From positions 1 to 64,000 of the forward strand of contig NW_020846801.1 in NCBI RefSeq assembly GCF_003704095.1: DNA of 64,000 bases. The letters run 5' to 3'. Below the pieces are notes generated by a model. That model was not told the origin of the DNA. It saw only the letters and a list, made by a program, of their open reading frames with translations, and ran no database searches. Both the position numbers and the translations under genes were made by a program. Positions 6,457 through 6,916 of this stretch are shown here, in pieces. Origin of the DNA: Pocillopora damicornis (lineage: Eukaryota). Within the stretch, counting starts at the first letter, position 1. Each line of letters starts with the position of its first letter.

Positions 6457-6916
6457 TTAAAGTTCAGTATGGGCTTGAGCATCCTGAAGATCTCCTGTGA
6501 CATCCACAAACCCACCAATAGGAGTTCCAACTTTGATTTTCAACTTCTTGCCAGGGGTCACTTTGTCGAGATGAATCACACGGACGGTGAGATCTTCATA
6601 ATTGCGAAAGTACATTGCCTTGTTGGTGAGGTCCTTGACCACAATCCAAGAAGTGTAGTCGGCCATGCTTTCATGATCATGGGATGCAGCGACTCCGTGA
6701 GGAATATCAACAGTGTTCATGATGTGCAAAGCCAAATTTACCGCCTCGTCACTTCTCTTGGCTGTATCAGCAAAGTGCACCATGGCTGCAGATCGTACCA
6801 GTCTCGACGGGGGAGTGAAATCTCCTGGAACACCAAGAAGTCCACTTCCTTGGCCAGTGGGTGGAAACGTTGTTTCACCCAATACCAAAGGATCATGAGC
6901 GAACTTAGAAAGATGG
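6457..6916 (-). CDS. Choloylglycine hydrolase/penicillin V acylase family (PF02275-type Ntn-hydrolase), C-terminal half ending HTEL
   Basis: GSGLLGVPGDFTPPSRLVR (family motif GLPGDxTPxSRF), NTVDIPHG, DYTSW, KDLTNKAMYFRNY; ends AQAHTEL*. The 5' part is lost in gap 6917-7016. Confidence 0.9.

What the first reader, a model, noticed from the sequence alone, without database searches (positions are those of the whole stretch)
6457..6471. The hydrolase ends in HTEL: signal peptide plus a KDEL-type retrieval motif
Seen: ...CAT ACT GAA CTT TAA gives HTEL*, and the N-termini carry a 19-aa signal peptide whose predicted cleavage (TDA/C, THA/C) would expose the nucleophile Cys. Known: HTEL acts as an ER-retention signal on mammalian carboxylesterases. 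Inference: after transfer the enzyme was retargeted to the ER lumen and is activated by signal peptidase. That would point to intracellular detoxification or lipid-amide metabolism rather than secretion into mucus, and argues against contamination.
Basis: partly seen in the sequence, partly recalled or inferred. Interest (0 to 1): 0.78.

Follow-up and report, generated by a model that had tools for sequence, protein, structure and literature searches.

The report
Coral bacterial-type amidase with ER-retrieval tail
A stony-coral gene for a bacterial-type amide-cleaving enzyme really does end in HTEL, a KDEL-like "stay in the endoplasmic reticulum" tag kept across stony corals and missing from bacterial relatives, but a 2011 paper already described this layout for an Acropora copy.

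Summary
On the minus strand, 6471..6457 reads CAT ACT GAA CTT TAA (HTEL*). It closes a 152-codon open piece of a choloylglycine-hydrolase/penicillin-V-acylase (PF02275) gene in a pocilloporid coral scaffold.

The tail looks selected, not accidental:
- A complete intronless paralog elsewhere in the genome ends HDEL.
- 27 of 38 non-redundant coral-clade relatives (Pocillopora, Stylophora, Oculina, Acropora, Montipora) end [HRKQ]-x-E-L, or HDEF in Acropora.
- Positions -1, -2 and -4 are constrained, while -5 and -6 vary freely.
- None of 74 named bacterial relatives, nor 33 further bacterial-type ones, has such an end.
- The genome encodes a KDEL receptor, and polyA RNA covers the exon with HTEL and the stop intact.

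- The signal peptide ending directly before the catalytic Cys is the usual bacterial layout (A|C in 64 of 77 relatives). It is inherited; only the 5-12-residue C-terminal extension is coral-specific.
- The HTEL piece and the two N-termini are fragments of three different paralogs, separated by 100-N gaps. The NCBI model joins two of them.

Prior art: Hayward et al. 2011 (PMC3204972) reported an Acropora millepora CBAH protein with a signal sequence and a putative ER retention signal, KEEL.

ER residence and substrate remain untested.

The parts
6460..6471 (-). Codons CAT ACT GAA CTT = HTEL, the C-terminal KDEL-type tetrapeptide
   Evidence: Read directly. No RNA differences were listed at these positions in 4 runs.
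6457..6459 (-). TAA stop codon
6460..6916 (-). C-terminal 152 codons of CBAH/PVA-type gene 1. They include the catalytic Arg equivalent to BsPVA R228 (in FTPPSRLV). The N-terminal part lies beyond the gap.
   Evidence: PF02275 E 1.4e-17. 151/152 identical to residues 217-368 of P0046.
6227..6456 (-). 3' UTR. RNA contigs of two polyA/RT libraries end at 6227/6230. An AGTAAA variant polyA signal sits at 6254..6249. One run extends to 5994.
   Evidence: (tables 2 and 8).
6917..7016 (.). 100-N gap that hides the rest of gene 1. It was not filled.
7891..7898 (+). TATAAAAG box 84 nt upstream of the ATG of copy A
7975..8476 (+). Copy A (gene 2): the N-terminal part of a second CBAH paralog. The signal peptide is 7975-8031 (MKFALVVPILLKLFLATDA) and the nucleophile Cys codon is 8032-8034. 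It runs into the gap.
   Evidence: (PF02275 E 4.5e-13). 99% identical to L009 58-1510.
8477..8576 (.). 100-N gap into which copy A (+) and copy B (-) converge
8577..9143 (-). Copy B (gene 3): the N-terminal part of a third CBAH paralog. The signal peptide is 9143..9087 (MKFALVVPILLELFLATHA) and the nucleophile Cys codon is 9086..9084.
   Evidence: (PF02275 E 1e-22).
9220..9227 (-). TATAAAAG box upstream of copy B

Best explanation
The window holds fragments of a small cluster of intronless, transcribed coral genes. They encode a Cys N-terminal-nucleophile amidohydrolase of the choloylglycine-hydrolase/penicillin-V-acylase family, whose nearest non-cnidarian relatives are bacterial.

Proposed mechanism:
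1. The protein enters the ER through a 19-residue signal peptide. Signal peptidase cuts after T-x-A, which leaves the catalytic Cys as residue 1. This layout is inherited unchanged from exported bacterial relatives (inferred from sequence; cleavage not shown).
2. Corals added a short, flexible C-terminal extension that ends in [H/R/K]-[T/D/E]-E-[L/F]; here it is HTEL.
3. The KDEL receptor, which this genome encodes, would bind that tail in the Golgi and return the soluble enzyme to the ER. The enzyme would then act mainly in the lumen of the early secretory pathway and not be freely secreted.

Shown: the motif, its clade-wide conservation, its absence in bacteria, transcription, and conserved catalytic residues. 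Inferred: signal-peptide cleavage, receptor binding, ER residence and the substrate.
For: Family:
- PF02275 matches on all three pieces.
- B. sphaericus penicillin V acylase at E 5e-43.
- The AlphaFold model has pLDDT 82 and matches PVA/BSH structures at target-normalised TM 0.75-0.87.
- Cys1, Arg17, Asn175 and Arg228 equivalents are invariant or nearly so across 49 sequences.

Motif:
- HTEL* in the window, and HDEL* on the complete paralog G000:C37.
- Tails in the coral clade: HTEL 24, HDEF 14, HDEL 4, RTEL 4, RDEL 3, KEEL 2, and one each of KDEL, QDEL, RNEL, RSEL, RSDL, RDEF.
- Column entropy counted from the C-terminus: 0.4 and 0.2 bits at -1 and -2, 1.5 bits at -4, but about 3 bits at -5 and -6.
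- The linker from the VDVT anchor to the C-terminus (retrieval tetrapeptide included) varies between 12 and 18 residues, so the motif is anchored to the end of the chain.
- A synonymous CTT/CTC change sits in the Leu codon between paralogs.
- In the model the last 7 residues are coil and the last 8 (361-368) average pLDDT 66.

Contrast with bacteria:
- 0 of 74 named bacterial relatives from many phyla, and 0 of 33 bacterial-type hits, end this way. Their chains stop 5-12 residues earlier.

Machinery and precedent:
- KDEL receptor PF00810 is present at G000:C2763.
- Removing HTEL from human CES2 gives secretion (PMC4624787).
- AHTEL and AHDEF give the same signal with ERD21 as AKDEL; position -3 tolerates any residue but Pro, and -1 accepts L or F (PMC2140024).

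Signal peptide:
- 19 residues, Lys at position 2, a hydrophobic core with Kyte-Doolittle mean 3.0, T at -3 and A at -1.
- The same pattern holds in 25 of 29 relatives.

Real coral gene:
- PolyA RNA contigs from 3 studies reach word depth 38-165 over 6230-6916, against about 0-3 in the flank.
- TATA boxes lie upstream of both N-terminal copies.
- A moonraker exon and a TPR-CHAT gene lie on the same scaffold.
- Orthologs sit on 25-49 Mb coral contigs.
Against: - No localisation or cleavage data exist for any coral member.
- No SignalP-type predictor was available, so the signal peptide rests on simple rules.
- HTEL does not match the PROSITE pattern [KRHQSA]-[DENQ]-E-L. The specificity of cnidarian KDEL receptors is unknown.
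- 11 of 38 non-redundant coral-clade sequences lack the motif. Some look like truncated or wrong gene models, but at least P0067 ends in a called stop codon. Two end HDELR or HTELR, which should not bind.
- Most Acropora copies carry HDEF, which retains less well than HDEL in human cells (PMC7617889).
- Raykhel et al. found that many human proteins with such tails stay in the ER even without them, and KDEL-bearing proteins can be secreted.
- The HTEL gene is incomplete in this assembly.
Confidence: 0.72

Rival explanations
1. Leaky or regulated retention. The tail only slows export, and the enzyme is released from particular cells or stages (for example larval ectoderm at settlement) to act outside the cell, for instance on bacterial acyl-homoserine lactones.
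For: - Acropora copies mostly end HDEF, a weaker signal than HDEL (PMC7617889).
- Hayward et al. 2011 saw spatially restricted ectodermal expression at settlement and suggested a role in processing and secretion.
- A PVA-type acylase was detected in a coral larval proteome and read there as quorum interference (PMC12960093).
- Gram-negative PVAs cleave AHLs (PMC5474475).
Against: - Strict conservation of -1, -2 and -4 across distant coral lineages argues for real receptor binding.
- AHDEF was as good as AKDEL for ERD21 in one assay.
- No secretion data exist.
Confidence: 0.18
2. The conserved tail serves another purpose, such as oligomer contacts or stability. The protein is simply secreted or sent elsewhere, and the likeness to KDEL signals is coincidental.
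For: - PVAs and BSHs are homotetramers in which C-terminal segments can contact neighbours (general knowledge; PMC5474475).
- Cnidarian receptor specificity is untested.
Against: - The conservation pattern (basic at -4, free at -3, E at -2, L/F at -1, always at the very end, after a linker of variable length and sequence) is exactly the receptor's requirement. It is not what a packing contact would give.
- The tail is modelled as flexible coil.
- Bacterial relatives do without it.
Confidence: 0.07
3. Chance ending, or bacterial contamination of the assembly.
For: The gene is intronless, and its best non-cnidarian matches are bacterial.
Against: - Clade-wide conservation against 0 of 74 in bacteria.
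- PolyA RNA and TATA boxes.
- Animal genes on the same scaffold.
- Orthologs on chromosome-scale coral contigs.
Confidence: 0.02

Closest known systems
Acropora millepora transcript A5 (Hayward et al. 2011, PLoS One 6:e26411, PMC3204972)
   Same: A coral CBAH-domain protein of 369 aa whose best matches are bacterial choloylglycine hydrolases. [quoted passage not shown] It corresponds to the NKEEL-ending branch of the tree (P0057/P0065).
   Different: It is a different paralog group, about 50% identical to the window type, and its tail is KEEL and not HTEL. That paper did not compare tails across corals or with bacteria, and did not note that the leader-Cys junction is bacterial in origin.
Exported bacterial choloylglycine hydrolase / penicillin V acylases of Gram-negative and other bacteria (for example Pectobacterium PaPVA, PDB 4wl2; 77 GTDB relatives)
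   Same: Same family and fold, 33-43% identity. A signal-type leader ends A|C immediately before the nucleophile Cys, and the catalytic residues are the same.
   Different: They have no C-terminal retrieval motif, and the chain ends 5-12 residues earlier. They work in the periplasm or outside the cell, not in a eukaryotic secretory pathway.
Bacillus sphaericus penicillin V acylase and Clostridium perfringens bile salt hydrolase (PDB 3pva, 2bjf)
   Same: The best solved relatives (E 5e-43 and 5e-36; target-normalised TM about 0.8). They use the Cys1/Arg17/Asn175/Arg228 machinery.
   Different: They are cytoplasmic. The Cys is exposed by removing Met or a 3-residue propeptide. They have neither a signal peptide nor a retrieval tail. 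The coral and related bacterial sequences have Glu where BsPVA has Asp20.
Mammalian carboxylesterases CES1/CES2 (HIEL/HTEL)
   Same: Soluble luminal hydrolases held in the ER by an H-x-E-L tail. Removing HTEL from CES2 gives secretion (PMC4624787).
   Different: Unrelated alpha/beta-hydrolase fold with a Ser nucleophile. The likeness lies in the sorting signal only.
NAAA and acid ceramidase (animal members of PF02275)
   Same: Eukaryotic Cys-Ntn amidases of the same superfamily that enter the secretory pathway through a signal peptide and cleave lipid amides (established knowledge).
   Different: They are lysosomal and are activated by internal self-cleavage into two chains. They have no KDEL-type tail and are distant in sequence; none appeared among the listed hits (the best 120).

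Membership tests
Choloylglycine hydrolase / penicillin V acylase family (Pfam PF02275, Cys-Ntn hydrolases) | Profile match above the curated cut-off | tested here: met
   The three window pieces score 64.8, 81.6 and 50 bits against a cut-off of 20.4. The complete paralog scores 195.6 bits.
Choloylglycine hydrolase / penicillin V acylase family (Pfam PF02275, Cys-Ntn hydrolases) | The nucleophile Cys becomes residue 1 of the mature chain | tested here: inconclusive
   The Cys directly follows a 19-residue leader with T-x-A at -3..-1 in copies A and B and in P0046, and it is invariant in 49 sequences. Cleavage itself cannot be shown with these tools.
Choloylglycine hydrolase / penicillin V acylase family (Pfam PF02275, Cys-Ntn hydrolases) | Catalytic/oxyanion residues equivalent to BsPVA Arg17, Asp20, Asn175, Arg228 | tested here: met
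   R36, N201 and R254 of P0046 are invariant or nearly invariant. Position 39 is Glu and not Asp, in corals and in the closest bacteria alike. In the window itself only the Arg228 equivalent (6460-6916 piece) and Cys/Arg17 (copies A and B) are visible. The Asn175 region lies in the gaps.
Choloylglycine hydrolase / penicillin V acylase family (Pfam PF02275, Cys-Ntn hydrolases) | Alpha-beta-beta-alpha Ntn fold | tested here: met
   The AlphaFold model of P0046 has pLDDT 82.2 and pTM 0.83. Foldseek top hits are PVA/BSH structures, probability 1.00, target-normalised TM 0.75-0.87.
KDEL-type ER retrieval signal on a soluble luminal protein | Tetrapeptide at the extreme C-terminus with a free carboxylate | tested here: met
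   HTEL is followed directly by TAA. RNA shows no change there.
KDEL-type ER retrieval signal on a soluble luminal protein | Matches PROSITE PS00014 [KRHQSA]-[DENQ]-E-L | tested here: not met
   HTEL has Thr at -3. The paralog on C37 (HDEL) and 12 of the coral-clade sequences in the tree do match. Raykhel et al. showed that the PROSITE pattern is too narrow: -3 accepts any residue but Pro, and AHTEL equals AKDEL for ERD21.
KDEL-type ER retrieval signal on a soluble luminal protein | The protein enters the ER lumen (cleavable signal peptide, no membrane anchor) | tested here: inconclusive
   The leader fits n/h/c-region and -3/-1 rules and models as a detached low-confidence helix. No dedicated predictor or experiment was available.
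KDEL-type ER retrieval signal on a soluble luminal protein | Motif conserved among orthologs while neighbouring tail residues drift | tested here: met
   27 of 38 non-redundant coral-clade sequences have it. Entropy is 0.2-0.4 bits at -2 and -1 against about 3 bits at -5 and -6. It is absent in 74 + 33 bacterial relatives.
KDEL-type ER retrieval signal on a soluble luminal protein | A KDEL receptor is present in the organism | tested here: met
   PF00810 matches of 98.9 and 94.1 bits at G000:C2763.
KDEL-type ER retrieval signal on a soluble luminal protein | ER localisation that depends on the tail | not testable with these tools
   This needs a localisation experiment with and without HTEL.

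The most novel reading that the evidence does not exclude
After a single ancient bacterial transfer, stony corals turned an exported amidase into a resident enzyme of the ER lumen by adding about five residues. They have kept this for the whole history of Scleractinia, and Acropora weakened the signal (L to F). The enzyme would destroy membrane-permeant bacterial acyl-homoserine lactones or other N-acyl amides inside host cells. That would be an intracellular quorum-quenching defence, analogous in logic to mammalian ER-associated PON2, with the strength of the tail setting the split between ER and secretion.
Probability: 0.15. Interest if true: 0.7.

Novelty: new member of a known kind. Interest (0 to 1): 0.36.

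Why it matters
This is a clean case of how a horizontally acquired bacterial enzyme is fitted into a eukaryotic cell. The bacterial export leader already works as an ER signal and already exposes the catalytic Cys, so a few added C-terminal residues are enough to change the enzyme's destination.

For coral biology it predicts that these multi-copy 'penicillin acylase-like' genes act inside the secretory pathway and not in mucus. These genes are regulated at larval settlement and are detectable in larval proteomes. The prediction bears on proposals that they quench bacterial quorum signals.

The core idea is already in the literature for one Acropora gene. The gain here is the clade-wide comparison and the correction about what is inherited and what is new.

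Tried and rejected
- I tried to read the three window pieces as one gene, as the NCBI model LOC113680992 (P0064, 339 aa) does. I rejected this. Contigs from other Pocillopora samples match the HTEL piece at 99% but both N-termini at 88-90%, and copy A lies inverted between them.
- My first ORF-picking script for the bacterial loci failed for about half of them. I redid it using the match frame.
- Looking up contigs for the odd unnamed relatives (P0067, P0062, P0088) gave only short metatranscriptome or metagenome contigs with no organism, so their taxonomy stays open.
- The 'careful' tree did not finish in time. I used the quick LG+C20 tree.
- A canonical AATAAA polyA signal was not found downstream of the stop, only AGTAAA.
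- A search of earlier scan notes by words gave nothing.
- I did not run the big representative protein search, because the word search plus the genome-contig scan had already answered the question about bacterial tails.
- No attempt was made to fill the N gaps.

Full report
**What is in the sequence**

On the minus strand the window reads ...GCC CAT ACT GAA CTT TAA. The HTEL codons are 6471..6460 and the stop is 6459..6457. This closes an open frame of 152 codons that starts at the edge of a 100-N gap (6917-7016). The frame matches positions 199-305 of Pfam PF02275, the choloylglycine hydrolase / penicillin V acylase family (E 1.4e-17).

Two N-terminal pieces of the same family lie nearby:
- Copy A, + strand: ATG at 7975, leader MKFALVVPILLKLFLATDA, Cys codon 8032-8034.
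- Copy B, - strand: ATG at 9143, leader MKFALVVPILLELFLATHA, Cys codon 9086-9084.

Both run into a second 100-N gap at 8477-8576 from opposite sides.

**Assembly caveat**

The whole-genome search finds only these three fragments plus one complete, intronless paralog on another contig (G000:C37, 364 aa from its ATG), which ends VHDEL*.

Uninterrupted contigs from other Pocillopora samples (Tara metagenomes) show how the fragments relate:
- L007 carries a complete 368-aa gene (P0046). It matches the window's HTEL piece and its downstream flank at 99.1%, but copies B and A at only 90% and 88%.
- L009 matches the contig that holds copy A at 99.1%.
- P0046 is 151/152 identical to the window piece.

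The window therefore holds fragments of at least three paralogs, with the remainder lost in the gaps. The NCBI model for this locus (P0064, LOC113680992 of Pocillopora damicornis, 339 aa) joins copy B's N-terminus to gene 1's C-terminus across the inverted copy A, so it is probably chimeric. Complete relatives were used only as separate proteins.

**The host and the reality of the gene**

- The nearest named proteins are from Stylophora, Acropora, Montipora, Oculina and Pocillopora, several on contigs of 25-49 Mb.
- The scaffold also carries an exon of the animal protein moonraker and a TPR-CHAT gene.
- Both N-terminal copies have a TATAAAAG box 84 nt (copy A) and 77 nt (copy B) upstream of the ATG.
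- PolyA-selected RNA contigs from three studies cover 6230-6916 (one run from 5994) at word depth 38-165, while the flank 5700-5990 is near zero. Stranded raw reads have their first mate on the + strand, as expected for a minus-strand RNA in the usual stranded libraries.
- No difference from the genome is listed at 6457-6471.
- Two contigs end at 6227/6230, about 20 nt past an AGTAAA.

The gene is a transcribed coral gene, not a contaminant.

**Is HTEL a selected motif?**

In a tree of 107 full-length relatives, all named coral sequences fall in one clade of about 70 rows (SH-aLRT 98; 95 on the C20 tree, which has fewer rows). Tails within that clade: HTEL 24, HDEF 14, HDEL 4, RTEL 4, RDEL 3, KEEL 2, and one each of KDEL, QDEL, RNEL, RSEL, RSDL and RDEF.

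After thinning to 38 non-redundant sequences, 27 carry such an end. Counted from the C-terminus:
- Position -1 is L (25) or F (2).
- Position -2 is E (26) or D (1).
- Position -4 is H, R, K or Q.
- Position -3 is T, D, E, S or N.
- Positions -5 and -6 are nearly random, at about 3 bits.
- The linker from the conserved VDVT anchor to the C-terminus (retrieval tetrapeptide included) varies between 12 and 18 residues.

That is the requirement of the KDEL receptor as mapped in human cells. There, -3 accepts anything but Pro, -1 accepts L or F, and AHTEL and AHDEF give the same signal with ERD21 as AKDEL (PMC2140024). Between Pocillopora paralogs the Leu codon differs synonymously (CTT/CTC), while a linker residue changes.

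The eleven exceptions include apparent truncations or wrong gene models, such as Desmophyllum P0030 and P0024. At least P0067 ends in a called stop. There is also a pair ending HDELR/HTELR.

**Bacterial relatives**

A scan of one genome per bacterial and archaeal species returned 80 loci from many phyla at 33-43% identity. 77 could be read and 74 had complete ends. None ends xxEL, xDEF or xxDL. The 33 bacterial-type proteins among the first hits also lack it. The aligned chains stop 5-12 residues before the coral ends, for example ...VVDITSELKADE* against ...FVDVTDELKPANARTEL*. The contrast is 27/38 against 0/74 (Fisher p about 2e-17). Because the sequences are related, the honest count is few events: a minimum of 5 state changes on the tree.

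**What is inherited and what is new**

The same bacterial relatives nearly all have a hydrophobic leader that ends directly before the nucleophile Cys. 64 of 77 have Ala at -1, for example MRTAMLYISIILILFSTAPLSSNA|CTEFR. The coral leaders are 19 residues long, with Lys at position 2, a hydrophobic core with Kyte-Doolittle mean about 3.0, and T/S/A at -3 and A at -1 in 25 of 29. They keep this junction.

So exposure of the catalytic Cys by a signal peptidase is the ancestral design of exported members of this family, not a step invented after transfer. The coral-specific change is the short C-terminal extension.

- In the AlphaFold model of P0046 (pLDDT 82, pTM 0.83), the leader is a detached low-confidence helix and the last seven residues are coil; the final 361-368 block averages pLDDT 66, as a receptor-accessible tail should be.
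- The fold matches PVA/BSH structures at target-normalised TM 0.75-0.87.
- Catalytic positions are conserved: Cys1, Arg17, Asn175 and Arg228 equivalents, with Glu for Asp20 as in the closest bacteria.
- The genome encodes a KDEL receptor.

**Most likely mechanism**

1. Co-translational entry into the ER.
2. Leader removal, leaving Cys1.
3. Folding into a soluble, probably tetrameric, amidase.
4. [quoted passage not shown]

The enzyme would then work mainly in the lumen of the early secretory pathway. I put this at about 0.7.

The main alternative (about 0.2) is that retention is partial or regulated and the enzyme is released in some cells or stages:
- Acropora's HDEF retains less well than HDEL in human cells (PMC7617889).
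- The Acropora gene is expressed in restricted larval ectoderm at settlement (PMC3204972).
- A PVA-type acylase is seen in a larval proteome (PMC12960093).
- Gram-negative PVAs cleave acyl-homoserine lactones (PMC5474475).

The substrate is unknown. Detoxification or lipid-amide metabolism is a guess.

**Comparison with what is known**

Hayward et al. 2011 (PMC3204972) described Acropora millepora transcript A5. [quoted passage not shown] That is the NKEEL branch of the present tree.

Bhattacharya et al. 2016 list a 'penicillin amidase' among anthozoan gene-transfer candidates of bacterial origin (PMC4878875). Whether it is this family was not checked.

The architecture and its reading are thus already published for one paralog. 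Added here:
- the HTEL/HDEL Pocillopora members;
- the clade-wide conservation pattern;
- the explicit contrast with bacterial ends;
- the point that the leader-Cys junction is ancestral;
- the fragment structure of this locus.

**Verdict**

This is a new member of a known kind. Interest is moderate to low (0.36).

Noticed in passing
window 6457-9143; protein P0064: The NCBI gene model LOC113680992 (339 aa) appears to be a chimera. It joins copy B's N-terminus to the C-terminal piece of a different paralog, and its 'intron' contains the inverted copy A and two 100-N gaps.
   Followed up: partly
window 9249-9402: A tandem repeat of a 29-bp unit, 5.3 copies at 90% match, sits just upstream of the TATA box of copy B. 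Its function, if any, is unknown.
   Followed up: no
window 6698: The genome has His in DIPHGV. RNA contigs of two runs and the Tara ortholog have Arg (T>C on the + strand). This is an allele or paralog difference next to a conserved motif.
   Followed up: partly
proteins P0007-P0034 (Acropora group): Most Acropora copies of one subfamily end HDEF and not HDEL/RDEL. This is a natural L-to-F change that weakens retention in human-cell assays (PMC7617889).
   Followed up: partly
L091 (P0062) and P0073: Two metatranscriptome relatives inside the coral-type clade end HDELR* and HTELR*. One extra Arg after a perfect motif should block receptor binding unless it is trimmed. The stop codon was checked in L091. 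The organism is unknown.
   Followed up: partly
proteins P0080, P0089 (Hydractinia) and P0088: The Hydractinia homologs group with the coral clade and not with the bacteria, but lack the motif. One ends in a hydrophobic stretch (...IFIVFFLVIALF), which could be a membrane or GPI anchor. An unplaced marine metatranscriptome relative (P0088) ends KTEL.
   Followed up: no
window 60542-63961 (-), 46055-46960 (+), 1727-2662 (-): There is a 1140-aa uninterrupted TPR + CHAT domain ORF, an exon-like ORF matching the animal centriolar protein moonraker, and a 312-aa ORF with a weak CCHC zinc knuckle, possibly from a retroelement gag.
   Followed up: partly
G000:C2763:9013-12292 (L005, L006): This is the KDEL receptor gene of this genome, matched exon by exon. 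The stops inside the second match are presumably intron sequence.
   Followed up: no
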